A stretch of 64,000 bases of DNA. Source: Zygnema circumcarinatum SAG 698-1b (lineage: Eukaryota > Plantae > Zygnematophyceae). The stretch spans positions 558,001-622,000 of the forward strand of contig CM074814.1 of the NCBI GenBank assembly GCA_037447605.1, written 5' to 3'. Of this stretch, positions 1,504 to 62,306 are shown one piece after another; within the stretch, counting starts at the first letter, position 1, and every line of letters begins with the position of its first letter. Position numbers and translations under genes: made by a program. The notes beneath the pieces are model-generated. The model was not told the DNA's origin. It was given only the letters and a program-made list of their open reading frames with translations, and searched no databases.

Positions 1504-4072
1504 GTCATCTAGCAGAAGAATACTTGTCATCACCTTCTCTTGTTGCTCTAAAACCATCTTTTGAGACCGTTGAAGCTTTCTCTTCTCTCCTTTCCTGTAC
1601 ATCATCTGCTATAGCATTAGAAGTTGTTAGTTTGGGATCATTCTCAAAAACTGTCTTCAAATCTTTTGCTTTGAAGATTGCAAGGGATATGCCGCTCCAA
1701 GAGTCATTTAGCAGTCTGATAAAATACTTGTCTTTTTCTCTGGTTGCTCTAATACCACTTGCAGGGGCCATTGAAGTCTTTTTTTTTTTTATCAACTTTA
1801 CTCTTAGTCTTAATTGATTTCATTCATTCATTCACCTCATTCAACAGACGATGCGTGAGAGTGAAGCTGATCAAAAGAAAACTTCAATGGCCTCAACAAC
1901 TGGTATCAGAGCAACAAGAGAAAAAAATTGACAAATATTTCATCAAACTACTAGACGGCAGCAACTATGACTCTTGGAGCGACCAATTGCTTGCGGTCTT
2001 CAAAGCAGAAGGTTTGCTGAAAACAGTTCCTGGGAATGATTCCAAATAGTAGCTTCTGATTCTACAGAATATCTCTTTCTCTCCCTCTAACTGTACTTAA
2101 TAGAGGCTTGGGAAAGGAGAGAAGGGAAAGCTTCAATGACCTCAACAGGGGAAAGGGAAGGGGAAGGGGCGAAAGGAAAGGGCTATAGCTAAAACTCGTT
2201 CTAAAATTTCCTATACTTTCCAAGAGAGTTTGAAGAGTCTCTAACATTTGGACGCTTCTTATAATTTGATTCCTATGGCTTCTAGGCCTCTCGAACTTTA
2301 GAGGGTGTTCAAAGTGGAGTTCCATAACCTTCTTTGCTTTCAGACCAAGAAGAATTTGTGAGGACTCTTTCAAATGGAGAGAGCCATGAAACATAAGACA
2401 TTGAGGAATGCACGAAATGCCAAAGACCGGAACTGAACGGCGCAAAAGTGACATGGAAAAGAGAGAGAGAGAGGGAGAGAGAGGGAGAGAGAGCGAGAGA
2501 GAGAGAGGGAGAGAAAGAGAACGTACCCCGTCGAGGCATACGACCTTCGAACCATTTCAGGGCTCCATGGAAACCCCGTCGTTCGAATTTCCATGGGAGA
2601 GAGCTCGCCCGTAGTTACTTTCCGTACATATCTGGCACACACGTGCAGGATATCAATAGGTGAAAAGCGCCAAAATAAACATTCAATTCTGCATTAACCA
2701 AAGGTTTGCAAAAGTTTTCTTTTCGAAAATGTTTACTAATTAAAGGGAGAGTGAAAATGGTCTCGATTTGCTGACACAAAGGGTTCTAAGAAAGTGCAAT
2801 TTTTTTTCTTAAGGGTAATACAAGGTATATACCTCCTTTACGGTTTACTTTAAACGAAACATTTTAGGGTTACATTGGGAGATGAGAGCGGTCCTCACTC
2901 CTGGTCATGCACACGTGTCAGCTCCTCATAGGTCGCTAGAGGGCTGGGAAGGAGCGTGAGGATGTCAGAGAGAGACGAATCGGCTTCGAGCAGCTGACGA
3001 GTTGCGAGGTATCTGCAACAAATACAAAAAAAAAATAATGGATGGAAAGGAGGAGTTGTACAATACGTGATACAATAATTCCTCATCAAGCATGCACATT
3101 TGAGCAATAGAGGATCGTAAGAAAACAGGGGCTTAGGAGAAGGGAAATGGAGGGAGAGGGAGAGGGAGAGGGAGAGGGAGGAGAACAAGGAGAGAGAGAA
3201 AGTGTGTGAGAGAGAAAGAGAGGAAGAGAGTGGGAGAGAGAGGGAGAGGGAGTGGGAGAGGGAGAGGGAGAGGGAGTGGGAGAGGGAGAGGGAGAGGGAG
3301 AGGGAGANNNNNNNNNNAGGGAGAGGGAGAGGGAGAGGGAGAGGGAGAGGGAGAGGGACCGGGAGCGGGAGCGGGAGAGGAAGAGGGAGAGGGAGAGGGA
3401 GAGAGAGAGGGAGAGGGACCGGGAGCGGGAGCGGGAGAGGAAGAGGGAGGGGGACAGGAGGAGAGAGAGAAAGAGAGTGAGAGAGAGAGAGCGAGATTGA
3501 GAGAGTAGCACTAAAGCGGGCCCTCACTTGTTCATTGGAAAGCGATGCCCTTCAGGAAGAACCACCTCCGCGTGGTCGGAGTGGAAAGCGAGCAGCCCTT
3601 CTCCCTCTCCTCCCTCCATGGCTGCCTGCACACTCGTCCTCTCCACCGCACCACTTTTGCTCCCTCCTTCCGCGAGAATTGCCGCCGCTTTTGTTGTTAG
3701 AAAACGTGAAGAGGTAAGGGAGGAAGGGCCCAAAAATTTGTGGTAATGAATTTGGGAGGTAGAGAAAGGGTTGGGGCTTGGAAGTGGGGGGGAGCTGAAT
3801 GGTGGTTTAGGGTTTAAGGAGCGGTTCAACCTGTGAGCTTCAAAGGGGTTACATGTAGAGGAGTTGAACGAGCGAATGTTGAAATTGGAAGTGTAAAAAG
3901 AAAAATGGCCATTTGGGTTTTCTTTAGTTCTACATTTTAAGACGATATTTGATTCAGATTTTACTTTAGATTTGCTTAAAAGGGAGGCACTTAATCGCAA
4001 GAGAGGCGGTACTTTGAACGGAAAGGAGAGCATCTTGGAGAGGGAGAGGTCCTGCAAGGTTCCTACAGACAT
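1..4072 (-). CDS. Zn-dependent histone/lysine deacetylase family protein, bacterial-like (HRFPM-type) clade, long N-terminal extension; 3' end lies beyond window start
   Basis: GT-AG exons (minus): 3528-4072, 2899-3012, 2527-2631, 1274-1380, 975-1081, 246-458, <1-49. They join in frame to ...HRFPMNKYLATRQ...RVHDQEYVRKV...GFPWSPEMVRRSYASTGGT...GGTHHAFRDHGEGFCVFNDIAV...VIDLDVHQGNGTA...SMHGANNYPW...VFFQAGVDALKEDSFGRLSM. The HH dyad, DxDVHQGNG and AGVD Zn ligands are intact. Start ATG at 4072 is inferred. Confidence 0.9.
1090..1260 (+). repeat. Interstitial plant telomere-like repeats (TTTAGGG and variants) in HDAC intron
   Basis: ggtttagggtttagggtttaggctttagggttt at about 1090-1123 and degenerate ttagggtt copies at about 1200-1260. 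Confidence 0.8.
1425..1500. repeat. (GA)n microsatellite
   Basis: Pure GA dinucleotide run of about 75 nt just upstream (on the sense strand) of the acceptor at 1381. Confidence 0.95.
1505..2145. mobile_element. LTR-retrotransposon remnant (tRNA-Met PBS plus copia-like gag N-terminus) present as inverted copies
   Basis: TGGTATCAGAGC at 1901-1912 followed by KLLDGSNYDSWSDQLLAVFKAEGLLKTV (copia gag N-terminus-like). A diverged inverted copy runs from about 1757 downward (tggtattagagcaaccagag...RLLNDSWSGISLAIFKAKDLKTV), with a further partial copy at about 1510-1570. Confidence 0.65.
3140..3505. repeat. (GAGAGG)n-type purine tract with internal direct duplication; contains an N gap
   Basis: gagagg hexamer arrays; gggaccgggagcgggagcgggagaggaagaggga occurs twice (about 3355 and 3415). 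Lies in HDAC intron 1. Confidence 0.85.
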
Positions 4073-5554: not shown

Positions 5555-8500
5555 ATGGCGGAGCTTTGGTCGAGACGGTCTATTTCAGAGGCGAGTTCAG
5601 AGACTCCACGGGATGGCAGTGAAGGGGAGAAGGAAAGAGAGGGAGAGGGAGAGGGAGAGGGAGAGGCAGGAGAGGGAGGGGGTTACATTGAAGAGGAAGG
5701 TGGAAGCTTCTCAAGAGCCTCCTTTTCGGTGGATGATTCGACCGCTGAAGGTTTCTTTGAGAGCTTCATTACGCAGTCTGAGGGGACGGAACTCAATAGC
5801 GGTGAGTGATGGAGAACCAATGCTGCCATAAACACCGTAATGGAGAATATTAAAGGAATTATTCCTCTCTCCATCTCACTCTTTCCCCCTCTCCTAATTT
5901 CTCTGACTCACTCTCTCTCTCTCTCGCGTGATGAATTCCTTTCCATTTCTTGCTGTCACACTCCTAAATTGCTACTTCTAGCTCAAGATGTCGTAGTAAG
6001 ACCGCTCAATTAAACATAAAAGACACTGAATTTGGAACTTTCAAAAAGGAATCTCTATGTAAGCGAGTCGCTCTGGCTGTGCAAAATTCTGTGAAGCTTA
6101 ACCAACAGGATATTTTGAGGCTTCCTCTTGAACAACAGAGTATCCATATCTATATATATATAGATATAGGTATAGATATATATCGTATCTGCGCTCATGA
6201 AGGCGCGTGCTTACGAAAAAGAATGTCAGGGAGATTCTGGTTAAAGAGTTACATCGAACAGCAGCAACTTCTGTAGCGCAGTCCATGGCGCCTCTCATGT
6301 TGATCCATGCTTTCGTTTTGTGTAACATAATTTTTTCCAACTAATCATGAAGATATAGGTACTTTCGTTCTCATGCCCTTCCATCTTTTTCTTTTTTTTT
6401 CTTCTTGGTTTCATTTCTTTTTTTGACACATTGCGCACCGTGACAGGAGGTGACGCCCTGAGCGAGGAGCCCGCCGACTCGACGGGTCTCCCCGGCCCCT
6501 TTGCGGCCATTCAGTTCCGACTGCCAATTCCGAATTCCGAATGTCCGCCCTTTCAGGACTCGCCGGAGACTCCCTCCGGAAAGGGCGGCCGCGCTCTGCG
6601 GTAAGGGCTTCCCTCTGAATGGCAGGGGAGGGAGTACTGCCAAAGGAGTACGGGAATGAGAGATGAGCTTTGATATAGCTGAAGGAGATTACACGTTTGA
6701 TGAACATTGAATTCGATCGTTCCGGGGTTTGGAAGTTTAGAAGATAAAACTAATGTTTGGAAAGGTTACTTTTAGTTTTAGTTAGTTTTACTTTTAGTCT
6801 TAGCACTACTTGGAATCAAGGGGTTGGGGGAGAGAGTGCGGGAAATGCTCATTCAATCGCGGGATTACGCAGGGGACTCTCTATACGCACTCTTTGTCAA
6901 CTCAACCGAATATTGAAGCTCTATCTGTCTCTCTCACTCTCTCTCTCCCCCTCTCTCACACACACAAATGCATTAACTCACGCTCTCGCTCCCACTCTTT
7001 GTCACCGTCGCCCTAGCCATGTACGTAACCTGCATTCCATGCTGGCAGGGGTGCAGAGCTGCAAGGACAGAGCTGGGGAGGGCTCTCTCCTCCCCCTCCT
7101 CCTCCTCCTCCTCCTCCTCCTCCTCCTCCTCCTCCTCCTCCTCCTCCTCCTCCTCCTTCCCCCTCCCCTCACTCTCTCTCCTTCTCCACGGACTCCCCCT
7201 TGTTCCGGCCTCTCCCTTCGCCACCTTCCGCAGAGAGCCGCCTCGCGGGGGAGGTCACGGCACCGACCGACTGGGACGCAGGGACGTCCCTTGCGGCGCA
7301 AGGTCCGCTTCAAAACCTCTGAAATGAGGGAGGGAGGGAAGGAGAGAGGGAGGGAGGGAGGGAAGGAGAGAGGGAGGGAGGGAGGGAGAAAGGGAGGGAG
7401 GGAGGGAGGGAGGGAAGAAGCGGGGAAGGGAGGAATGGAGGGGGGAAGTGGGGAACGAAGGAGGGGGGAAGGGAGGGAGAGAAAGAGGGAGGGATGGAAA
7501 GAGGGAGTAAGGGAAAGAGGGAGGAAGGAAGGGAGTGAAGAAAGGAGGAGAGATGAAGGGGGGGGGGAGGGGAAAGGGAGGGAGGAACGGGGGAGTAAGA
7601 AAGGGCAGAAGGACGAAGGGAGGAAGGGACGGAGGGAGTGGGGAAGGGAGGGAGGGACGAGAGGGAGAGGAAGGGAGGGAAGGGGGAAGGGAGGGAGGGA
7701 GGAGAGGGAGAGGAAGGGAAGGGAGGGAGGGACGAGAGGGAGTGGAAGGGTGGGAGGGGGAAAGGGAGGGAGGGACGGGGGGAAGGGAGGGAGGGACGGT
7801 GGGGAAATAAGAGGGCGAGGAAGGGAGGGAGGGAGGGAGGGGGAAGGGAGGGACGGACGGGGGGGCGAGGAGGGGGAGAGGAAAGAAGGGAGGAAGGGAG
7901 GGAGGGAATTTTTTCTATTCTAGTTCCGTTTCTTGCTTCGCAGGAACACCGAAGAGGAGGCGGACGGCGGAGAGGAAGCGACCCGCCAACAGCACTTCGC
8001 AGTTTCGCGGAGTCACACATCACATAAGGACGGGGAGGTGGGAGGCCCACATTTGGTGAGCATTTCAAACCACTCTAAAATGATGATTTTATTCCTTTTT
8101 GGGTTCTTGCAGTGGTAGGAAAACGGTAGAAGATACCAAAAAGGGAAGACTAATTTTGAGTTTGGCTCGTTTTAACTAAGTTGAATGTGTGTTCAATGGT
8201 TTCCTCCGCCTTGCTTTTTTGCCTTTGATTTTTTTGAATTCCTTGCAACAGCGTGAGTAGAAATGTTGGGTTTTTTTCTCCCATTTTTGCCTCGCAGGGA
8301 AAATAGTCGCCAGCTGTATTTGGGAGGCTTTGACACAGGCAAGTCGCAAAGCACAAACAGAATTTAGACTTTCAGTTTCGATGCAAAGCAAATAAATAAA
8401 CTTTTAAAAGAACATTGATTTTGTTTTCCTTTACTGCGTCCAAGTATCGAGAGCTCAACTTCGTTAAAGTTGAAACCTCACCAATGTACGAAGCGAGGCA

Positions 8501-11122
8501 CTGCTTGTTGGACAGAGGAGCACGCTGCAGTAGCCTACGACATAGCTGCCATCAAATGCAGGTACGAGTCTCTCTCTCTCTTTTTCTCTCTCTCTCTCTC
8601 TCTCGCCCTCCTCTCCCTCATTTCGTCTCTCTATCAAAATTCCCTCTTCTCGTCATCCCCTCTCTCCCTACCCATCGCGCCTTTCTTCCTCTACCTTTCC
8701 CGCTCTTTCCCTTACCCTCTCTCACTTTCCCAAATTTACAAATTCCTGTCCTGTGCTGATAGGCTGTGCAATATTGCAGGGGGCAGGAGGCGCAGACCAA
8801 CCTCCCTCTCAGCAATTACGAGTCGCAGTTCACCAACATCCGTAAGTGCTTCTCTCTCCCTCTCTCTCCTTCCTTACTTGCGGGAGGCTCTCTCTCCCCA
8901 CCCACCAACTCCCTCCCTTTTTACTTCCCCTACTTTTCTGCATGGACACGCAAGATGCAAGAAGAGAGAGCGACGTTGAGGAAGGAAAGGAGTGAGGGAG
9001 GGAAGGAGGGAGGTATGGAGGGAGGAAGGGAGTGAGGGAGGGCAGGAGGGAGGTATTGAGGGAGGGAAGGAGGGAGGTATGGAGGGAGGGAGTGAGGGAG
9101 GGAAGGAGGCAGGTATGGAGGGAGGGAGGGAGGGAGAGGAGCGTGGGAGGGAGATAGGGGTGCTATATTCACTACTATCTCTTTGTTGCCCTCTGGGTGC
9201 TCTATGCAGGGGCGGTGTCAAAGGAGGAGCTGGTGATGTCCCTCCGCCGTCACAGCAAGGGCTTCTCGCGGGGCACATCGCAGTATCGCGGCGTTACAAA
9301 ACACCAAAAGGCGTGTTCCCTCTCTCCTTATTACCATTAGTATAATTTCAGGCTTAACCATCATCACTAGCACTGAAGAAAAAGCTTCCGTCAATCTGAT
9401 ATGAAAACGAGGCTCGCAATCTTGCTTCAAAGGGGTAGTCCTTGCAAGAAGTCTGCAGTACTACTGAAGGAAAAACTTGTGTTTGGGTGAAACTCTGAAG
9501 CTCATATCAGGCAGGCATATCTTCTGGCATCATGCATACATGCATGACGTGAGAGAGTTTCACACATTTCGCTCCGTTTCATTTCATTTCTCCATCGTCC
9601 CATGGATCTCATAAACTTGACATTGGGTGATTCCAAGTGCAGGGCAAGTGGGAGGCGAGAATAGGGCAGCTGCAGGGGAAGAAGTACATGTACCTCGGCC
9701 TGTACGGCACGGAGGAGGAGGCCGCGAGGGCGTACGACAGGGAGGCTATCAGGCAAACCTTCTCTCCTCAAATATTCTTAAACAATAAAAAATTAGGGTT
9801 CTTAGTCGGAGAATTTTACAACACTTTTTGCTAGAGCATGAACTGAGAACTAGTGATTTTTCTTCTATTGTGTTCTATGCAGACAGAAAGGGGCGTTGGC
9901 TGTAACAAACTTTGATATCTCAACGGTGAATATTTTTATTTTCTCTCAATCTCACTCTCACTCCCACCCGCCCTCCCACTTTTCCCGTTTGATAGCTCTT
10001 ATTGATGAATCTTTACGAAGCTAAAATGCACGTTTCAAAGTCAAGTCATATGAATAGACAACTCTTGCAAGAGAATCTTGCAACCATGTGTAGCTTTCCT
10101 AACCCTAATTCTATAAAACCTAAGAACCCTAACAACTGCTAACAAGACCTGTCACTTGCTCTTACCCTGAAAAACCTATCAGCATAAACAGAACATTATG
10201 CTGCTGCTGCGTGCAGTATTCCGACCAGCCCCTCCCTAAAGCGGAACGCACGCAGGGAGAGGCTTCCTCTCAGCCCTCTCAAGGAGGCCCTGAACTTCCT
10301 TTTTTGCAAGCCGGGCAGCAACTCGGGCAGCAAGAAGAAAATCGCAGAAACGAGCAGTTTCCATGGCTGAGAAGGGACCACCTCCTGCACGACCTCCAGC
10401 CTGACCCTGCTCTCTCTGAGACTGCCTCTCTTAGCGGCTCTCCTAGGGTCACTGCAGAAGGAGTGGGAGTGGGAGTGGGAGGGGGAGTGGGAGGGGGAGT
10501 GGGAGGAGGGGGAGGGGTGGTGGGAGGAGGAAAGGGAGGAGGGGTGCTGGGAGGGGAGGGAGGAGGAGGAGTAGGAGGGGGAGGGGGAGTGAGAGGACGA
10601 GGGGAAGGAGGAGGAGAGGATGTTGAAGCACTGTTTGGGTCACTGTGGCATGATGAGAGTGGGTATCTCGGAACATGTCAGTGTGCTCATATGGAAAATC
10701 CCCAGCTTGGTTTACATGAAGTGGAAGGGTCCAATGCTCAAGCAGGATACGCTTCTCTCCCCCTTCCCAGATCAGTAGAAGTACATGAACAGTGGGGCGG
10801 GCTTCTCTCTCCTTTTGACGGGCAAGCAATAGGCGTAGGAGGAGGGGAAATTTCTGGTTCTACAGGAATGATATCTCACAGCTTGAGTATGCCAGAATTG
10901 CAGCAAACACGTGCATGGTTAATGCAGCCATCTCATACTTCTCCAGGAGCAGTTTTCGGTGAAGGCCCTGCAGAAGCCTCTCTTTCTGATATGAAAAAGG
11001 GCATGGCAGCACACAGAAGGCAGCTTCGGAGGCAACGATTAACAGAAGCGGAAGAAAGTAGAAGTCGAGCTCAGAGTGGGAATGTGAATCCCTCTGCACA
11101 AAGGAGAGCTTTTACGCAGTAA
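5555..11122 (+). CDS. AP2: AP2 transcription factor with two AP2 domains (euAP2-like, no ANT-type insertion in R1)
   Basis: Domain exons 7944-8055, 8298-8338, 8516-8561, 8780-8841, 9210-9310, 9643-9752, 9883-9925, 10217-11122 give [58 protein letters not shown]-linker [39 protein letters not shown]...[32 protein letters not shown]. Three donors are GC. The 5' exons (5555-5801, 6447-6600, 7234-7312) are tentative and their phase linkage is not fully resolved. Confidence 0.88.
7093..7157. repeat. (CCT)n trinucleotide microsatellite
   Basis: About 21 CCT units in an AP2 intron. Confidence 0.9.
7323..7908. repeat. Long polypurine (G/A) low-complexity tract in AP2 intron
   Basis: About 590 nt dominated by ggag/ggaa/gagg units with few pyrimidines. 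Confidence 0.9.
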
Positions 11123-11911
11123 TGTACAGATTTAAATTGTTCGTCTGATTTGCTTCTTAGTCTGCAGAAAGAGGGGTTGAATGTGGAGAAGGTACATGTC
11201 AAAATGTCATCCGCTACAGAGGGATAGAGCCGATGCAGAATGAAAACCTGCAGGTCGTTTGGGTTTGAAAGAGTTTTGACTAACCTTTAACCCGAACCCT
11301 AACCCTAACTGTGATTCTACATTGAAATTTGAAGCAAATCTAAAATTAGTGTGTAGATTTTCAGTATTTCAGTCAGTATTTGAGTCAGTATTCGTAAGTC
11401 GTAGCATGGAAGACCAGGTGCAGGCTCGTGGCTAGAAACCCTAAAAGCATTAGTCATTCTCTAGAGCAGGCAGCCATGCTTCAGATTTAATGTGAGGAAG
11501 GCAGTTTGTAACTTTGTATAGTAGTGTGCAAACTTAGGGAGGTTTACATGCAAAGTCCCTCAAATGGAGGGCTTATTCCTGTAAAAATACTTCATAACTG
11601 AACAGAGATGCGCGAGATATTTTCAAGCCATTGTTGCCTGCATGCACTTGTATCCGATCCATTTTTTTGCAACGCGTCTATCTCCTCTGTCCCTTTCCTG
11701 CCTCTCTGCAAGCTCAAGTTTCTGTGTCAAAAATATTCGAGGAAAAACCCCTTTAACGTCATATCAATCGAGTAAAATAATCCTTGAAGCAGACGATGAG
11801 CCGCTTATGCACTGGCGGATCCACGGTTGAATTCAAGAGGGGCCTTTAGCTCTGTTCACAAACTTCAGTCACCACAGAATCACGGAGTACTTTAATCTCC
11901 TGCTTATAATA

Positions 11912-12424: not shown

Positions 12425-14118
12425 ATGGCCGGTGTATTGCGGCAGCGTTTCTCTCGGAGGCTTGTTCTCGGAGCCTTCTCTCAGCTACCCCATAGCAGCT
12501 CCAGACTCCATGCTGTTGTAGCTAACGGAAACGGACCTACTGTTGCGTACAGTACATGGAACGCTGTCGAGGTCATGCTTGCACGTGCGAGTTCCGCGGC
12601 CTGTCAGCGGAGCCCCCCCTGGCTGCCTCTGCTTCCTGTTAAAGGGCGCCACTTCAGTGGTAAGCGAAAGAGACCTGCATACATATTGCATACATGCCCC
12701 ATGATATACCTTTATGCATCCTCATGACATGATTTCATGGCCCATGCATGTCCTGCTTTCAGAACCCTATGCCATGGTTTCGGAGCAGAATGCCGTACTT
12801 CCATAACCCCATAACATGTTTTGACGGTCCAATTAACAGCTTTAATTGGCCTCGACATGCTCCTCTAAACCCATCATGATGCGTTTGGTAGCTCGGACAC
12901 ATATTTCCTTTGTACAGTGTCATGCTCTCATGCCCTCATGTCGTCCCCATGACATGCTTTTGTAGCTCTGTGACGTACCCTAACGACCCAATGCCATGCT
13001 TTGATAACCCCATGGCATGCTTCCATGCTTCAATGTGTAGGCACATAATATCCCCATATATATATTTTACATTTTTTTCTTCTTTTTTTATATGTTCCTC
13101 TTTGAAGTGCAGGTGCTGCGACTTCAAAGGTGGTAGTAGTCGCAACGGATGACGAGTTCCAAACGGCACTGAAAGATGCTCAAGGTGCAACTTCAAAGCA
13201 GGCCCCTACGCCTCGTTTCCTCCTTTCCCCTTCATTTGCTTTTTTAAGGAAATCAGTTTCTCTTCATGTTTCAAGGCTGTATTTCTCAATCTTTTAAAGA
13301 ATTGCTCTTTATTTTTTCTTTGATATTTTTTTGGGTGGGGTGGAAGGTGGAAACAGACAAGAGTCAACTGGCGGTGGTTGACTTTACTGCTGTGTGGTGT
13401 GCCCCTTGTAAGTGGCTCTCTCTTTTTCAAGCTAAAACTCCTTTGACTATACCTAATATATTATATATATAGTTTTTTTCATTCTCTGCCCGTCCCATAG
13501 TTGAACACATGTTCTATTACTGTCCAGCTTCATTACCCTGACCGACAAGGTCGCAATCTCAACCCTATAACAGAACGAGTCTAATTTGAAAACCTCTCCA
13601 CCGTGAACCCTTAAAATGACGTCCTAAGAGTTTTATGAAGGAGGACGGGCAGGCCAAAAGTTTGCTCCAATATTCGATCAACTGAGTATGGACTGGGAGG
13701 ATGTGCGCTTCCTCAAGGTCGACATTGATAACGTACGCAGTCTCAGATTTTCTTGGACATTTTGAGTTTTCAAGGATAGAAATGCAGAGGAAAAATGTAT
13801 TTCCCAAGGAAGATGTCTAAGTGCAGTGGATTTCATTTCTCGCGTTGGAAACAGGAAGATTTGCAGCAGACCGTCACGAGTGCAGGCATTAGAGCGGTGG
13901 TATGGCCCCNNNNNNNNNNCCCTCCCCCTCCCCTTCCCTTCTCGAGAGCTAATTTTTGCTTCGTTCCTTCCCTCTCTTCCCTTCCACTTTCTTGCTTTTA
14001 TTTTTCTTTCGGGCAGCCCACTTTTCAGTTCCACAAGGGAGGGAAGAAGAAGGGTGAATTTACCGGCGCCGACCTCGAGAAGTTGAACGACATGATTCAA
14101 CTACATCGCCAAACTTAA
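12425..14118 (+). CDS. TRXO: Thioredoxin, o-type (mitochondrial), active site WCAPC
   Basis: GT-AG exons 12425-12659, 13113-13184, 13357-13407, 13653-13732, 13855-13899, 14017-14118. Arg/Ser-rich presequence (MAGVLRQRFSRRLV...RHFS), then VVDFTAVWCAPCQKFAPIF...FLKVDIDNEDLQQTVTSAGIRAVPTFQFHKGGKK. The L..t......I.AVPT insert is typical of Trx-o. Confidence 0.88.
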
Positions 14119-22500: not shown

Positions 22501-25456
22501 ATGTTCGGCCGCATGGGGAGCAGCAAGAAGAGTGACAATTCCAAATATTATGATATTTTAGGAGTGACAAAGAGTGCTTCTGCTGACGAAATTAAGAAAG
22601 CGTACAGAAAGGCAGCTATAAAAGAGCATCCTGACAAAGGTGGTGATCCAGAGAAGGTAAGCACTTGGCTTTTTTCATGCCTGCGCAAGCGAAAAGGTGT
22701 GGAGTACTTTTCAATTATGCGCCTATTCCTGACAGGGCTGCTGCTGTTTAAGGATCTCCTGAAGCGCCGGATGCTTGGTTGATCGTTGTGATTGCCTTAT
22801 TGACATATTTGGAATGCAATGAGAGGAGGGTACTGGATGGTTCGCTTACCCTGTGTTTTGCATGTGTGGAGCTTGCAGTTTAAGGAGATCGCTCAAGCTT
22901 ATGAAGTGTTGAGTGATCCAGAGAAGCGTGAGATATATGATCAATATGGGGAGGATGCCATCAAGGAGGGCTTGGGTGGTGGTGGAGGCGGAGGACATAG
23001 TCCATTTGATATCTTTGAATCTCTCTTTGGGTCAGGCGGAGGTGGATTCGGCGGCGGATTCGGAGGTATGTCAAACCCTGAGCTTCTTTCAGGAGTTTCT
23101 GTGGTAAGCATTTTTGGAAGTGATTAGTGTCTCTTCTTCGCCGATTCTCGAGTCTTTGGAAGGCGGATATGATTCAAGAAGGTGTATATTCGGTATACAA
23201 GAGAGGCGAGATGCAGAAATAATATCTGTACAAGAGTATTGAACAGAAGAAGGCTTGCATTTTGGCAGGTTCTCGCAGAAGTCGTCAGAGGAAAGGAGAG
23301 GATGTCGTACATCCGTTGAAGGTGTCTTTGGAAGATTTGTACAATGGCACCTCGAAGAAGCTCTCTCTTTCAAGGAATGTACTGTGCCCGAAATGCAAAG
23401 GGTACGCCCTATCCTTTCCAAGTGTCTCTTGGAGTTTGTATTGACGTTCATATGTGTATATTATCGTCACGTCCCGGGAATGGAAGTTCCCTGTCCAGCG
23501 TTTTTAATTGTAATGTCTGACTTGAATTGTATTGGCTTGAATGCACCGGAAAACATTTTGATTTTGCAAATTGACTATTTTGACAGGAAAGGATCAAAGA
23601 CTGGCGCATCGAGCACATGTTCTGGTTGCCAAGGTTCAGGAATGAAGGTTTCTATACGTCAGCTCGGACCCAACATGATTCAGCAGATGCAGCATGTTTG
23701 TCCTGATTGCCGAGGATCAGGTAATGAATGACCTGTCACTGATTTTGCTACCTGAGATTATGTTCTGATCGAGTAGGACTGAAAAAAGCAATCACCTACT
23801 TTCAAGATTTGCTTTGTAAAACAAGTAAAATTAGGGGACATCATATCGTTTTTGTTTGATGATTAGGTCAACTAAGAACTCCCTGTCCGTGAAGGGTATC
23901 CTGCGGGATAGTTCTCGTCTTGTTGATTAAGTTGCTCTCTTAACGAGTACTTGGATTCTTTATCATGTTGATCAAATTGAAAACACGAACTTTCTCTTTG
24001 CTTTCGGTGTGTACAGGTGAAATGATTAGTGAAAAGGATAAGTGTGGGCAGTGCAATGGTGAGAAGGTAGTTCAGGAAAAGAAATTCCTGGAAGTGCATG
24101 TGGAGAAGGGTATGCAGCATGGCCAGCGGATCACGTTCCAAGGAGAAGCAGATGAAGCCGTGAGTTTGCTATTTGCCTTGCAGTTTTCATTTTTGGGATC
24201 TTGTTAGAATGTTGTGAAAGTGGGCTGCTAGAGGTCCCTTCCGTTTTTCATTTCTTTCTGTCGGTCTTTTGCGTCTTTCTTGCCTGAGAGGCGATTTTTA
24301 TTTGTCTCAGCCGAGTAGCATTTTTTCGTCGAAAAGAATGGCTTTGGTTGCAGTGTGCCACATAAAATGATCTGGGTCTGGCTTTTTGGCTTTCTTGTTG
24401 GTTTACTTCCAGGTTCTTAAAGGTTTGTCATGATAGTCTTGACCCCTTGTACGTCTTACTCTTGTTTTGTTTGATCATTACTCCTTGAATGCTATCGTCA
24501 TTGCTTGTGAACTTGCTTTAGCTGAACATATTACAGTGCGTCGCGAATCTGCAATGAACAGTTTATAGTCGTATTTTCTATACGTGTCTTGCCGCATCTG
24601 AATGATCTTGCTCTGCCTATTTCCTTTCACACCTAACGACAAGCTCTTGTCGTTTGTGGTGGAGGTTGGGTGCAATAGTCAGTTAGCGGTGGATTTAGCC
24701 TTTCAGGCGTGAGATTCTGACATTTTTCACTCGTTTTTGTGTTTGCAGCCCGATACAGTCACTGGGGACATTGTTTTTGTGCTGCAACAGAAGGAGCATC
24801 CCAAGTTTAAGAGGAAGGGAGATGATCTCTTCACTGAGCACTCGCTAACACTGACTGAAGCACTTTGCGGCTTCCAGTTTCCCATGACTCACCTTGATGG
24901 ACGGCAGCTTCTGATTAAGTCGCATGTGGGAGAAATCATTAAGCCAAGTGAGTCTTTCTTCCTACGGCTGGTATTAAAAAAAAATCCTTGCAGGCTGGAG
25001 TTCGTGGTTCCTGACCTTCCTTGGCTTGGTTGGAACTTCAATGCGGAAGCATCTTGCCTGCTAGACTTTTGTTCACTGTTTATACGGTCGTCGGGACATG
25101 TATTGTGTTCTAAGCGATGCTTTGCTGACCTTGCAGAGCAATTCAAAGCGATTAATGATGAAGGTATGCCTGGGTATCAAAGGCCCTTCGTGAAGGGTCG
25201 ACTGTACATTCAGTTCAATGTGGAGTTTCCGGAGTCCGGCTCCCTGAGTGTGGAGCAATGTAAGTTGCTAGAGACAGTTCTCCCACCAAGGCCTGCCAAC
25301 ACCTTGACAGAAATGGAGTTAGATGAGTGTGAAGAGACAACTCTCCATGATGTGAACATTGAGGACGAGATGAGGCGGAAACAGCAGGCCGCTCAAGAAG
25401 CCTATGATGAAGATGATGAGGGAGCCGGGCCCAGGGTTCAGTGTGCTCAGCAGTAG
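22501..25456 (+). CDS. J3: Class A (type I) DnaJ/HSP40, ATJ2/ATJ3-like, CaaX end CAQQ
   Basis: Exons 22501-22656, 22879-23065, 23269-23401, 23587-23720, 24017-24159, 24749-24947, 25137-25456. J-domain [13 protein letters not shown] linker, four CxxCxGxG-type repeats, C-terminal ...PRVQCAQQ*. Confidence 0.96.
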
Positions 25457-27234: not shown

Positions 27235-31788
<4,554 letters not shown>

Positions 31789-59390: not shown

Positions 59391-62306
59391 ATGGCCGCCG
59401 GAGGGTTCTCTACTTGGGAGAGCTGGGTGGTAGCGAGACCCTCGCAAAACTTAACTCTCGCATCCTCTTCTTTAAGATCCAATAGCTTCACCAGTTCCTG
59501 TACTCATAATGCCCTTCTATCAAAAGAAGCTCTAGGCTCTCCCTTCAGGCAAATAATCCGTGAAAAATGCGGCAGGAGACGCACCGAACCAGGCCAAAAA
59601 ACTCCCAAAATTCGCAAATCGAGACGAGGAGTCCTGGTAATTGCTAAGTCCTCTCTTCGCTGCAGCCGCTTTGCAGGCGAGTTGAATGGGAGTGGGTTCG
59701 GAATAGGGGGTGAATCAAAGCTTGAAAGGGGAGCTAGCAGTAAAGTAGGATTTAGTGATACACGACATCGGCATCGCGTAGTGCGAACAGTGCCAAGGGC
59801 AATTCCGCCTCTTTTGTGGATTCAAATGCCGGAAGCAGGTCCTATGAGAGATTTAGTTTTTTCAATTTTTGGAGCAAGCGGAACTTCACTTCTTGCAGGG
59901 GCAGCAGTGTGGGCGTGGCATCGGGAAGAGCTCAGGGTGAGCTTACTGCTTCGCTTTGATGGTGCTTGGGATGGGTATGGGGTGCGGATGTTCGTGATGT
60001 ATAGCATGCATCTTGCATGGACATGATGTATGCCTGATGCCCGGGCAATTTCTCTCCCTCGTACGCATGTGTTAGTGCGTCTTCTAGTTAGAAGAGGTTT
60101 GTTTTTTGTGGAAGGTGTTTGCTCAGCTTCAGTGAAGGGAGGTGACTACTCACTGACAGAAGAAGTTTGAGTCAATGCGAATTGGAGGTGCTTAGCAAGC
60201 TTTTTGTACGAGGGGATATTCTTACCCGTAGGCTAAGCTGCGTAGGTGCACACATACGACATCTACTACGCCTGGATGCTCAGTTATGCAGAATTGAGCA
60301 TGTGCAAAACAATATTTATCCGTTTTTCCATGAAGAACGTTGTTCTTCCCAGCTAACATCTTAATTTCTTTGTTGGTTTCCTTTCAGCTGAGAGCTGCAG
60401 CTGCAGAGAGAGGCCGAGCTGCCCTTCCTGAACCCCCGAATGTTGCGGGCCAGAAAGAGTCTGTGGAGTGGGTGAACATGGTCATTCAAAAGATATGGCG
60501 AGTGTACCGCCGGAGTTTGGAAGCGTGGCTAGTGGGCCTTCTGCAGCCGGCCATAGACAAGCTGCCCAAACCTGACTATGTCACTCGAGTCGAAATTGCC
60601 GAGTTCTCTCTCAATTATGAGCCGATATCTGTGAGGAACGTTCAGAGGCGGGCATCAAGGCGCTCCAATGACTTGCAGTAAGGCCTTTCTTTCTTAGTCT
60701 CTTCTTATTCTGGACTAAACCCATTTCTGAGCCCTGGGAGAGTTATGTAAGGAGTAAAGGGTGTAAAGCTCAAACAACTACCTGGATGGAGATTGGGTCC
60801 ATATAGTTGAGGTTGTTTGCCAGCAAATCTGTCTCTCGCTTTCTCAGCATGTTTCGCCTTCCTCCGCAAGAAATAGCTTCCCAATCTGACTGCAGGTTTA
60901 ATGGGTTTGGACCAGTCTGTGAGAACAAGACAAACTGAGGGGAAAGAAAGGAATGAGTGTGTTAGAATCATCGAGCTTTAGCACATAGCTGAAATAGGCT
61001 TGCCACCTAATTTATCGAATGCCGCAAATCAAATCAAATTGAATCGAGTTTCATACTGACATCTCGCCATATTCCAATAGTCGTCGTTCGTAGTTGCCTG
61101 TGGCTTCACTCCTTCGCCTTTTTCTTCACTCTCCATTTCCTTCGGTTGTTCTTTCTTTCCCCCTTTCTCTTCGCTTACATTTCGTTTCTGCACTTCCTGC
61201 CCCACCCCACCCCCCTCNNNNNNNNNNCCCCCCCCCCCCCCTCCCACTTTCCCTTTTCTCCCTCTCCCTCTTCATCTCTTTGCAACTCCCTTATCGTTTC
61301 CCTCTCACTGCCTCCACCCTCGCCCTGCCTCCCGTTTTCTCTCTCCTGTTTCTACCACTCCCTTTCATCCCTCTCGTCCCTCTCCGCTTCCCCGTTCTCC
61401 CCTCCTTCCCCCCCTCCTAATTTCTTCTGTACCGCTGGACAACAGTTAATGCTTCATTCCTCCCTTTTTCTTCCTGCAGATACCACATAGGGCTGCGGTA
61501 TACGGGGGGAGCCCGCTGTCTCCTTGTGCTCCATTTGAACCGCAACGGTATGCAGACGGCAATTCCTGTGGGAGTGCATGATCTCGATGTGGATGGAGAG
61601 CTATGGGTGAAGCTTCGACTCACACCACGCAAGCCCTATGTGGGCACACTTTCGTTAGCATTTGTGCGACTTCCAACAATCAAGTTGGTTTTGGCACCAT
61701 TTCGCATCGTTAATCTGTTTGGTGAGTGGTGGGCAACTCTCATGTGAAGAGCACACTTAAGTACTCAGTAAAATTGAAATCCGTTTCGTAGTAGAAAAGT
61801 TTCATAGGGCTGAATCTAAATCATGCGTGGTGGGTCGTTGGTGGGAGTGATGTCGACGAGTGCGTAAAGTTAGTGTTGTCCTCGTGGCTCTCACTTCTCA
61901 CATTGACCTGATATGCTGAAACTACTGTTGCGAGATGGTCACTCAAATTGAACTAACGAGGAGCTGGGTTTTGGGTTGTGGGCATATTTTCCATGATCTA
62001 TTCTTCTGGTTTCATCAGCTATACCCTTCTTGTCCAGGTGAGCGGCATGCTAAAACGAATTGCCAGAACTTCGTTTGCTTAAACACAATGCACATCCCAA
62101 AGCCGAACTCTCTGAACTGAGCAAAACAAAACTCGCTGCACATGTTACATGCATTAGCATGTTGTAGGATATTTCTCACTCCTCTGCCACTGTAAAAGCT
62201 CCCATTTTCACAAATTAGAGTAACTCCACATAGCTCTACAGGCTTCCGAATCTTCCAGTGGAGTGTCTTTCGCCGTTACAACTCATCAACGCTGACTACA
62301 CCCTCT

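What the first reader, a model, noticed from the sequence alone, without database searches (positions are those of the whole stretch)
8339..9882. Three GC-AG introns concentrated inside the two AP2 DNA-binding domains
Seen: intact AP2 domains can be assembled only with GC donors at 8339 (ACAG|gcaagt, GGFDT|EEHAA), 9311 (AAAG|gcgtgt, TKHQK|GKWEAR) and 9753 (TCAG|gcaaac, EAIR|QKGA). The nearby GT alternatives either shift the frame or delete conserved residues (VTKHQK, YDREAIR). That is 3 of the 7 introns from the first domain exon onward, whereas every other donor I assigned in the window is GT. Known: GC donors are a rare minority (around one percent) of plant introns and are weaker and often regulated. 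Inference: splicing-level control of a developmental TF, switching between two-domain, one-domain or NMD isoforms, or lineage-specific GC tolerance under selection.
Basis: partly seen in the sequence, partly recalled or inferred. Interest (0 to 1): 0.8.

Follow-up and report, generated by a model that had tools for sequence, protein, structure and literature searches.

The report
Three GC-AG introns in algal AP2
A two-domain AP2 transcription-factor gene of a conjugating-type green alga needs the rare GC (not GT) start for three of its seven domain-region introns. Relatives carry GT at two of these sites, so this looks like an ordinary, lineage-specific splice-site variant; no regulatory switch has been shown.

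Summary
GC stands at 8339-40, 9311-12 and 9753-54, and only these donors give an indel-free two-AP2-domain protein. That protein is collinear with a clade of algal AP2 proteins (Closterium, Chlorokybus, Cymbomonas, Elliptochloris, a transcript contig).

- **GT alternatives:** every in-frame GT option adds or deletes 3-25 residues and has very poor flanks.
- **Donor strength:** the flanks of the three GC donors rank 38th, 21st and 31st among 38 GT donors of this window.
- **Background:** 34 other introns I could place in the window are all GT (Fisher p=0.003).
- **Sequence errors:** public contigs from three studies read the same bases at 9311 and 9753. Nothing covers 8339.
- **Relatives:** Closterium NIES-65 and four environmental contigs carry GT at the same positions and phases as introns 5 and 6. 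Intron 2 is absent in Closterium. The GC state is therefore derived, not conserved.
- **Selection:** the exons are under strong purifying selection.
- **RNA:** evidence is weak. Only the GT-AG intron 7 junction appears in a contig. GT and GC introns alike are crossed by unspliced contigs, and an antisense spliced transcript overlaps the last exon.

The regulatory-switch reading is untested. The scan noted GC-AG donors elsewhere in this genome (s1-406554, s1-404146, s1-321781; unchecked).

The parts
7944..8055 (+). Exon E1 of the domain region: basic stretch and start of AP2 domain 1 (..[27 protein letters not shown]). Upstream exons and the start codon were not resolved.
   Evidence: Translation. 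Aligns to the WRI1 chain 7wq5 and to Closterium P0131 at 79-85% identity.
8056..8297 (+). Intron 1, GT-AG (TTTG|GTGAGC), phase 2.
   Evidence: Closterium L006 has an intron at the same position with a GT donor.
8298..8338 (+). Exon E2 ([13 protein letters not shown]).
   Evidence: Maps to P0166 residues 269-281.
8339..8515 (+). Intron 2, GC-AG (ACAG|GCAAGT ... GGACAG|AG), phase 1, 177 nt, 38% G+C. No homologous intron was found in any relative examined.
   Evidence: Junction contiguity: P0166 281 then 282. Flank score is above all 38 GT donors. The intron is absent in Closterium L006, where GGFDSEKQAAL is contiguous. No read evidence at this place.
8516..8561 (+). Exon E3 ((E)[14 protein letters not shown]).
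8562..8779 (+). Intron 3, GT-AG (GCAG|GTACGA).
   Evidence: Same position with a GT donor in Closterium.
8780..8841 (+). Exon E4: end of domain 1 and start of the linker.
8842..9209 (+). Intron 4, GT-AG (ATCC|GTAAGT). Contains a GGGAGG-type purine-rich repeat at about 8960-9140.
9210..9310 (+). Exon E5: conserved linker and start of AP2 domain 2 ([33 protein letters not shown]).
   Evidence: Aligns to WRI1 residues 90-120. 32 of 33 residues are identical in environmental contig L003.
9311..9642 (+). Intron 5, GC-AG (AAAG|GCGTGT ... GTGCAG|GG), phase 0, 332 nt, 43% G+C. Two cryptic GT dinucleotides lie 2 and 4 nt downstream of the GC.
   Evidence: Relatives have GT at the same position: AAG|GTAAAG in Closterium, AAG|GTACGT in L003, AAG|GTGCGT in L005. 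Contigs of three studies read the same bases at 9311.
9643..9752 (+). Exon E6: core of AP2 domain 2 ([36 protein letters not shown] + AG).
   Evidence: Pfam AP2 positions 13-46, 32.7 bits. Aligns without gaps to WRI1 123-158.
9753..9882 (+). Intron 6, GC-AG (TCAG|GCAAAC ... TATGCAG|AC), phase 2, 130 nt, 33% G+C.
   Evidence: Relatives have GT at the same position and phase (AG|GTGAGT, AG|GTGACT, AG|GTGACG, AG|GTGATT). Contigs of four runs cross it unspliced with identical letters.
9883..9925 (+). Exon E7: end of AP2 domain 2 ((R)[14 protein letters not shown]).
   Evidence: Collinear with P0136 residues 135-149.
9926..10216 (+). Intron 7, GT-AG (AACG|GTGAAT). This is the only junction of the gene seen spliced in public data.
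   Evidence: The joint 9924->10216, GT..AG, appears in run X6. Same position with a GT donor in L001, L005 and Closterium.
10217..11122 (+). Exon E8: 301-codon C-terminal region rich in low-complexity Gly/Val, ending in stop TAA at 11120-11122. No relatives were found for it. Its GC3 is 0.41, against 0.75 in the domain exons.
10385..10938 (-). Intron(s) of an antisense transcript overlapping E8. Two alternative minus-strand GT donors (at 10879 and 10938) share one acceptor (10385).
   Evidence: Joints 10383->10879 (run X3) and 10383->10938 (run X6), both CT..AC on the + strand. The sites were read.

Best explanation
These are three ordinary major-spliceosome (U2-type) GC-AG introns in an intact, selectively constrained AP2-subfamily gene (euAP2-like, no ANT-type insertion) of a zygnematophyte-like streptophyte alga.

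Introns 5 and 6 sit at old intron positions that carry GT in relatives. The C at +2 is therefore a derived change in this lineage (direction inferred). Intron 2 has no counterpart in the relatives examined.

The GC donors are tolerated because the rest of each donor pairs well with U1. Each follows an exonic AG, and that AG is fixed by coding at introns 5 and 6 (AAG Lys; AG|G Arg). The intronic +3 to +6 positions are average to perfect.

The mature mRNA that encodes the two-domain factor must use them. They may be removed somewhat less efficiently than GT introns, as GC donors are in general. A dedicated switch is neither needed nor shown.

Shown: the sequence, the collinearity with homologues, GT in relatives, purifying selection and the donor context. 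Inferred: that the junctions are used, and that the change is neutral or nearly so.
For: - **Exact collinearity.** At all three junctions the model matches P0136 (an intronless transcript contig), P0166, P0227, P0190, P0154 and P0131.
- **Alternatives are poor.** Only the GC donors keep the domains free of indels. The flanks of the GT alternatives score below essentially every real donor, while the GC donors rank 38/38, 21/38 and 31/38.
- **Relatives carry GT.** The homologous sites of introns 5 and 6 have GT, at the same phase, in Closterium NIES-65 and in L001, L003, L004 and L005.
- **Selection.** pN is 0.05-0.10 with synonymous sites saturated, so the exons are under purifying selection.
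- **Not assembly errors at two sites.** The bases at 9311 and 9753 are the same in contigs of three studies.
- **The gene is expressed and spliced.** The sense-strand splicing of intron 7 is seen.
- **No special features.** There is no U12-type donor motif, no Rfam family, no unusual local folding at the donors and no repeat family in the GC introns.
- **Literature.** GC-AG introns are a known 1.2% class in plants with lower average usage (PMC6310983). GT>GC conversions accumulate in other lineages (PMC2490688).
Against: - No RNA evidence for any of the three GC-AG junctions. Contigs of four runs run through introns 5 and 6 unspliced. In X6 the contig that carries the spliced intron 7 junction continues unspliced through intron 6.
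- 8339 is not covered by any independent read data.
- Intron 2 has no homologous intron in the relatives examined, so its GC cannot be polarised.
- Three GC donors in one gene is unlikely by chance at ordinary rates (5.8e-5 at 1.2%), and 0 of 34 neighbouring introns are GC. A purely neutral account therefore leans on an elevated genome-wide rate and on the look-elsewhere effect, and I could not measure the rate.
Confidence: 0.65

Rival explanations
1. Regulatory switch. The GC donors make the introns that split the domains slow or conditional. The cell would then toggle between a full two-domain factor and truncated or NMD-targeted isoforms, possibly together with the antisense transcript over exon 8.
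For: Retaining intron 2, 5 or 6 gives a stop after 9, 9 or 27 extra codons. In run X6 the contig with the spliced intron 7 junction runs unspliced through intron 6. GC donors are associated with alternative splicing in several lineages (PMC2490688, PMC7242645) and have lower usage in plants (PMC6310983). The three sites are concentrated in one gene (Fisher p=0.0033). An antisense spliced RNA exists.
Against: GC is not conserved: relatives have GT at introns 5 and 6. Unspliced contigs cover GT introns 1, 3 and 7 as well, so the coverage is not specific to GC introns. De Bruijn contigs with k=31 cannot link intron 6 and the intron 7 junction, which lie 43 nt apart, to one molecule or one strand. 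The donor flanks are average to perfect, not weak. No structured element or conserved intronic motif was found.
Confidence: 0.15
2. Chance cluster in a genome where GC-AG donors are generally common (several percent). The gene is then simply in the tail of the distribution and was picked out by a scan of about a thousand windows.
For: Other first-stage notes on this genome report GC donors: two of seven in CYP710, three neighbouring genes with GC first introns, and 'GC-AG introns are strongly over-represented' in a 54-kb stretch (all unchecked). At a 5% rate P(>=3 of 7) is 3.8e-3, so dozens of genes of this kind would be expected genome-wide. A chlorophyte homologue also carries a GC-AG intron in its AP2 domain.
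Against: In this window 34 of 34 other introns are GT, giving an upper 95% bound of 8.4%. This reading is compatible with the best explanation rather than opposed to it.
Confidence: 0.1
3. Decaying or non-functional copy. T>C changes at +2 have crippled splicing, and the locus now yields mostly unspliced, untranslatable RNA.
For: No spliced GC junction was seen, and unspliced contigs appear in four runs. GC3 of exon 8 is low (0.41) and that exon has no relatives.
Against: All eight exons are open. The domain exons differ from distant relatives almost only at synonymous sites (pN 0.05-0.10). Every conserved AP2 residue stretch is intact. Intron 7 is spliced in the sense direction. The 301-codon open frame of exon 8 is unlikely without selection.
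Confidence: 0.05
4. The GC donors are not used. The real junctions would be nearby GT sites, giving a protein with small insertions or deletions; or position 8339 is a base-calling error.
For: In-frame GT options exist, for example GT9315 with acceptor 9637, which adds three residues. 8339 lacks independent coverage.
Against: All GT options change the length of the most conserved parts of the domain, whereas more than ten homologues are exactly collinear with the GC model. The flanks of the GT options score -1.9 to -8.8, against a median of 4.3 for real donors. 9311 and 9753 are confirmed by contigs of three studies.
Confidence: 0.05

Closest known systems
GC-AG introns of plants, the major non-canonical U2-type class (Pucker & Brockington 2018, PMC6310983)
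   Same: GC at +1/+2 with a normal AG acceptor. The rest of the donor has a good consensus. The introns interrupt conserved coding sequence at positions shared with GT introns of relatives.
   Different: Three occur in one gene, all inside or at the edge of the two DNA-binding domains, against a class average of 1.2%. Usage in RNA is not demonstrated here.
GT>GC donor conversions during evolution (Churbanov et al. 2008, PMC2490688)
   Same: The homologous donor is GT in relatives and GC here, with unchanged position and phase (introns 5 and 6).
   Different: That work is on mammals and uses parsimony on many genomes. Here the direction is inferred from a few relatives whose synonymous sites are saturated, and a link to alternative splicing is untested.
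AP2-subfamily (two AP2 domains) transcription factors: the euAP2-like algal clade and WRI1 (PDB 7wq5)
   Same: Two AP2 domains are joined by the conserved linker. Exon E6 aligns without gaps to WRI1 123-158. Domain 1 lacks the ANT/WRI1-type insertion, and the first turn of domain 2 has the shorter euAP2 length, as in P0247, which its source names 'AP2-like factor (euAP2 lineage)'.
   Different: The C-terminal 301 residues have no detectable relatives. A miR172 site and function were not examined. The N-terminus was not resolved.

Membership tests
U2-type GC-AG intron | GC at intron positions +1/+2 and AG at the 3' end, in the frame required by the flanking coding exons | tested here: met
   The three GC..AG pairs are the only ones giving an indel-free protein collinear with homologues.
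U2-type GC-AG intron | Good U1 complementarity at the remaining donor positions (compensation) | tested here: met
   A position weight matrix built from 38 GT donors of the window scores the GC donors 8.0, 4.4 and 5.7, against a median of 4.3.
U2-type GC-AG intron | Junction observed in spliced RNA | tested here: inconclusive
   No contig of four public runs shows the joints. Only intron 7 (GT-AG) is seen spliced, and contigs cannot show absence.
U2-type GC-AG intron | Homologous intron position in relatives | tested here: met
   Introns 5 and 6 have the same position and phase, with GT donors, in Closterium NIES-65 and in L001, L003, L004 and L005. For intron 2 the feature is not met: the intron is absent in Closterium, and Elliptochloris, Cymbomonas and L010 have introns at other positions.
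U12-type (minor) intron with GC or AT donor | Donor motif RTATCCTT and a TCCTTAAC-like branch site near the 3' end | tested here: not met
   The donors read GCAAGT, GCGTGT and GCAAAC, and no ATCCTT follows them.
AP2 subfamily (two AP2 domains), euAP2-like | Two AP2 domains plus the conserved linker, without the ANT-type insertion in domain 1 | tested here: met
   Exon-by-exon matches to WRI1 chain 7wq5. Pfam AP2 on E6 scores 32.7 bits for that exon alone, against a cutoff of 33.3. Collinear with algal AP2 proteins that have WE.GKQVYLGGFD without an insertion.
Regulated intron-retention / NMD switch | Retention creates a premature stop | tested here: met
   Stops follow 9, 9 and 27 codons into introns 2, 5 and 6.
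Regulated intron-retention / NMD switch | The weak splice site is conserved in related species | tested here: not met
   Relatives have GT at introns 5 and 6.
Regulated intron-retention / NMD switch | Retention ratio changes with condition or tissue | not testable with these tools
   Only contigs of four runs were available, with no strand and no quantification.

The most novel reading that the evidence does not exclude
This zygnematophyte lineage may have relaxed the requirement for U at +2 of the 5' splice site, so that GC-AG introns make up several percent of all introns. This AP2 gene would be an extreme case in which three domain-splitting introns became slow GC introns. Together with the antisense transcript over exon 8, these would gate production of the full two-domain factor by intron retention and NMD.
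Probability: 0.15. Interest if true: 0.55.

Novelty: new member of a known kind. Interest (0 to 1): 0.3.

Why it matters
For annotation, gene finders that allow only GT donors would break or mis-frame this AP2 gene, and probably others in this genome. Models for this alga should admit GC donors.

For biology, if the many unchecked notes of GC donors in this genome hold up, a streptophyte alga close to land plants would have an unusually high GC-AG load. That would make it a natural system for asking how 5' splice-site recognition drifts.

As it stands, the gene itself is an ordinary, constrained AP2 factor with an uncommon but known kind of intron.

Tried and rejected
- **Word search with exon 8**: no relatives. 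This genome's own proteins are not in the collection. The best PPH1 hit is 63% identical, followed by an unnamed transcriptome protein (57%), Mesotaenium and Closterium. I therefore could not recover an annotated model or name the species.
- **Public reads**: only Logan contigs were available. They do not show the GC junctions and cannot quantify or assign strand. Unspliced coverage is not specific to GC introns. I do not count the X6 contig (intron 6 unspliced next to the spliced intron 7 junction) as proof of retention, because 31-mers cannot span the 43-nt exon 7.
- **U12-type introns:** rejected; no ATCCTT motif.
- **Local GC bias or biased gene conversion as the cause:** rejected. The three GC introns are the AT-richer ones (33-43% G+C). 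DnaJ2 has a similarly high GC3 (0.71) and only GT donors.
- **Origin from a repeat or introner:** no other copy of introns 2, 5 or 6 in the window.
- **RNA structure or a known RNA family at the donors:** none.
- **Relatives for intron 2:** the P0140 look-up failed. Elliptochloris, Cymbomonas and L010 are too distant and have different intron positions.
- **First attempt to search E1:** I repeated it with a stop-free 45-codon reference.
- **Literature:** no paper gives GC-AG rates for Zygnematophyceae.
- Joined peptides of two neighbouring exons were computed only locally, to enumerate alternative junctions.
- **Structure prediction and complex prediction:** not used, as no claim here rests on them.

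Full report
**What is there.** The stretch lies in a plus-strand gene whose exons I placed by reading and translating:

| Exon | Coordinates |
|---|---|
| E1 | 7944-8055 |
| E2 | 8298-8338 |
| E3 | 8516-8561 |
| E4 | 8780-8841 |
| E5 | 9210-9310 |
| E6 | 9643-9752 |
| E7 | 9883-9925 |
| E8 | 10217-11122 (stop TAA) |

The seven introns between them begin GT, GC, GT, GT, GC, GC, GT, and all end in (C)AG. I could not resolve the exons upstream of E1. A 570-nt GGGAGGGA-like tract and a (CCT)n run lie there.

**The protein.** Searched exon by exon:
- E1, E5 and E6 match the two-AP2-domain protein WRI1 (PDB 7wq5). E6 aligns without gaps to residues 123-158 and E5 to the linker and the start of domain 2.
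- E6 alone scores 32.7 bits on Pfam AP2.
- A library-wide phmmer search with E6 brought in a clade of algal AP2 proteins: Closterium sp. NIES-65, Chlorokybus, Cymbomonas, Elliptochloris, an intronless transcript contig P0136, and several metagenomic ones.
- In the members displayed, the motifs read GGFD[ST]-E.., T[KR]HQK-G[KR]WEAR and ..EA[IV]-[RKAT]Q... There is no gap relative to my model at any of the three GC junctions.
- The gene lacks the ANT/WRI1 insertion in domain 1. One clade member is named by its source as euAP2 lineage.

**Are the GC donors needed?** I enumerated every GT or GC donor and AG acceptor around each of the three introns that keeps the frame open. Only the GC donors give domains of the conserved length. 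The GT options change the length as follows:

| Intron | GT option | Effect |
|---|---|---|
| 2 | GT8343 | adds 22-25 residues |
| 5 | GT9293 | removes VTKHQK |
| 5 | GT9315 with acceptor 9637 | adds three residues |
| 6 | GT9732 | removes YDREAIR |
| 6 | GT9798 | adds 15 residues |

A weight matrix built from the flanks of 38 GT donors of this window scores the GC donors 8.0, 4.4 and 5.7, against a GT median of 4.3. The GT alternatives score -1.9 to -8.8. The GC donors are therefore good donors apart from the C at +2, which is the usual picture for GC-AG introns.

**Are they sequencing errors?** Contigs of four public runs from three studies cover 9311 and 9753 with no differing letter. Nothing covers 8263-8504, so 8339 rests on the assembly alone.

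**Is the concentration unusual?** I placed 34 further introns in the window by homology or by comparing paralogues. They come from two tandem DnaJ-A genes, two NTMC2T5 paralogues, a histone-deacetylase-like gene, a CBS-domain gene and a phosphoglycerate-mutase-like gene. All 34 start with GT.
- 3/7 against 0/34 gives Fisher p=0.0033.
- P(>=3 of 7) is 5.8e-5 at the plant average of 1.2% (PMC6310983), 3.8e-3 at 5% and 1.1e-2 at the pooled window rate.
- The finding was picked out of about a thousand windows. Other first-stage notes on this genome report GC donors repeatedly, and one says they are strongly over-represented. These notes are unchecked.
- I could not measure the genome-wide rate. 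From this window, the upper 95% bound is 8.4%.

**Relatives.**
- In Closterium sp. NIES-65 (L006, GCA_948144175.1), introns 1, 3, 5, 6 and 7 lie at the same codon positions and phases, and all start GT. Intron 2 is absent.
- Four short environmental contigs of closer relatives (L001, L003, L004, L005) also have GT at introns 5 and 6 and at intron 7. In L003, 32 of 33 residues of E5 are identical to ours.
- More distant green algae have other intron positions. Elliptochloris has a GC-AG intron of its own elsewhere in domain 1.
- The GC state at introns 5 and 6 is therefore derived in this lineage. The GC at intron 2 cannot be polarised.
- Between this gene and the environmental relatives, synonymous sites are saturated while pN is 0.05-0.10. 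The domain exons have been under purifying selection, which argues that the gene is functional and hence that these introns are removed.

**RNA evidence.** No run on record as RNA was available, only Logan contigs. Two of the four runs laid contain spliced joints, so at least those are RNA-derived.
- The only sense junction seen is intron 7, 9925|10217, GT..AG, in X6. It confirms the E7-E8 link.
- No contig shows a GC-AG junction, but none shows the GT junctions of introns 1, 3 or 4 either.
- Contigs run unspliced through introns 1, 3, 5, 6 and 7.
- Two joints, 10383->10879 and 10383->10938, have CT..AC ends. These are canonical GT..AG on the minus strand, with good donor and acceptor context. 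An antisense spliced transcript therefore overlaps exon 8, and it may supply much of the unspliced coverage.
- The X6 contig that joins E7 to E8 continues unspliced through intron 6. Exon 7 is 43 nt, so 31-mers cannot tie the two features to one molecule or strand.
- Retention of the GC introns is therefore possible but not shown, and it is not specific to them.

**Other checks.**
- The GC introns are the AT-richer ones (33-43% G+C), so local GC bias does not explain the C.
- They have no other copy in the window.
- No Rfam family was found in the window, and there is no unusual folding at the donors.
- They lack U12-type motifs.
- Retention would end the frame after 9, 9 and 27 codons.

**Organism.** The PPH1-like gene of the window is most similar to an unnamed Logan protein (63%), an unnamed transcriptome protein (57%), Mesotaenium (54%) and Closterium (54%), with land plants below these. 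This fits a zygnematophyte-like streptophyte alga, as earlier notes of the scan say. I could not name the species, and its own proteins are not in the searched collection.

**Verdict.** The best reading is three ordinary, compensated GC-AG introns that arose from GT in this lineage, in a constrained AP2 gene. The switch hypothesis remains open, but the lack of conservation, the good donor context and the non-specific unspliced coverage all count against it. Literature links GC donors with alternative splicing and lower usage in general (PMC2490688, PMC7242645, PMC6310983), so a modest effect on efficiency is plausible.

Searches with a joined model or with words spanning a junction were left out.

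Noticed in passing
window 10385-10938 (minus strand), extending at least over 10216-11500: Two RNA-derived contigs carry joints with minus-strand GT..AG ends. There are alternative donors at 10879 and 10938 and a shared acceptor at 10385. This points to an antisense spliced transcript over the last AP2 exon, and contig depth there is the highest of the locus.
   Followed up: partly
window 22501-25456 and 27235-31785 (+): Tandem pair of DnaJ-A (J-domain, zinc-finger) genes with the same six intron positions. Eleven of the twelve donors were placed and all are GT; intron 2 of the second copy is ambiguous. GC3 differs strongly between the two copies (0.49 against 0.71).
   Followed up: partly
L006:4591-7644 (Closterium sp. 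NIES-65, GCA_948144175.1): The Closterium homologue's locus holds about six tandem copies of the E1-like exon and four of the E6-like exon. Its 1082-residue model (CAI6006714.1) repeats domain pieces. This is either a real exon-level tandem amplification or an assembly artefact.
   Followed up: no
L008:~715-805 (Elliptochloris bilobata, GCA_040144335.1): The chlorophyte AP2 homologue has its own GC-AG intron (CAG|GCAAGC) inside domain 1, between HHC(R) and TGRW. That position is not shared with the window gene.
   Followed up: partly
window 7095-7157, 7330-7900, 8960-9140, 10460-10600: A (CCT)n run and long GGGAGGGA-like purine-rich low-complexity tracts lie upstream of E1 and inside intron 4. 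A related tract lies in frame in exon 8, where it encodes a Gly/Val-rich stretch.
   Followed up: no
window 10217-11119: Exon 8 has GC3 of 0.41 against 0.75 in the domain exons of the same gene. It has no detectable relatives, although its 301 codons are open.
   Followed up: partly
window 3308-3317, 13910-13919, 61218-61227: Three 10-base runs of N, which are small assembly gaps.
   Followed up: no
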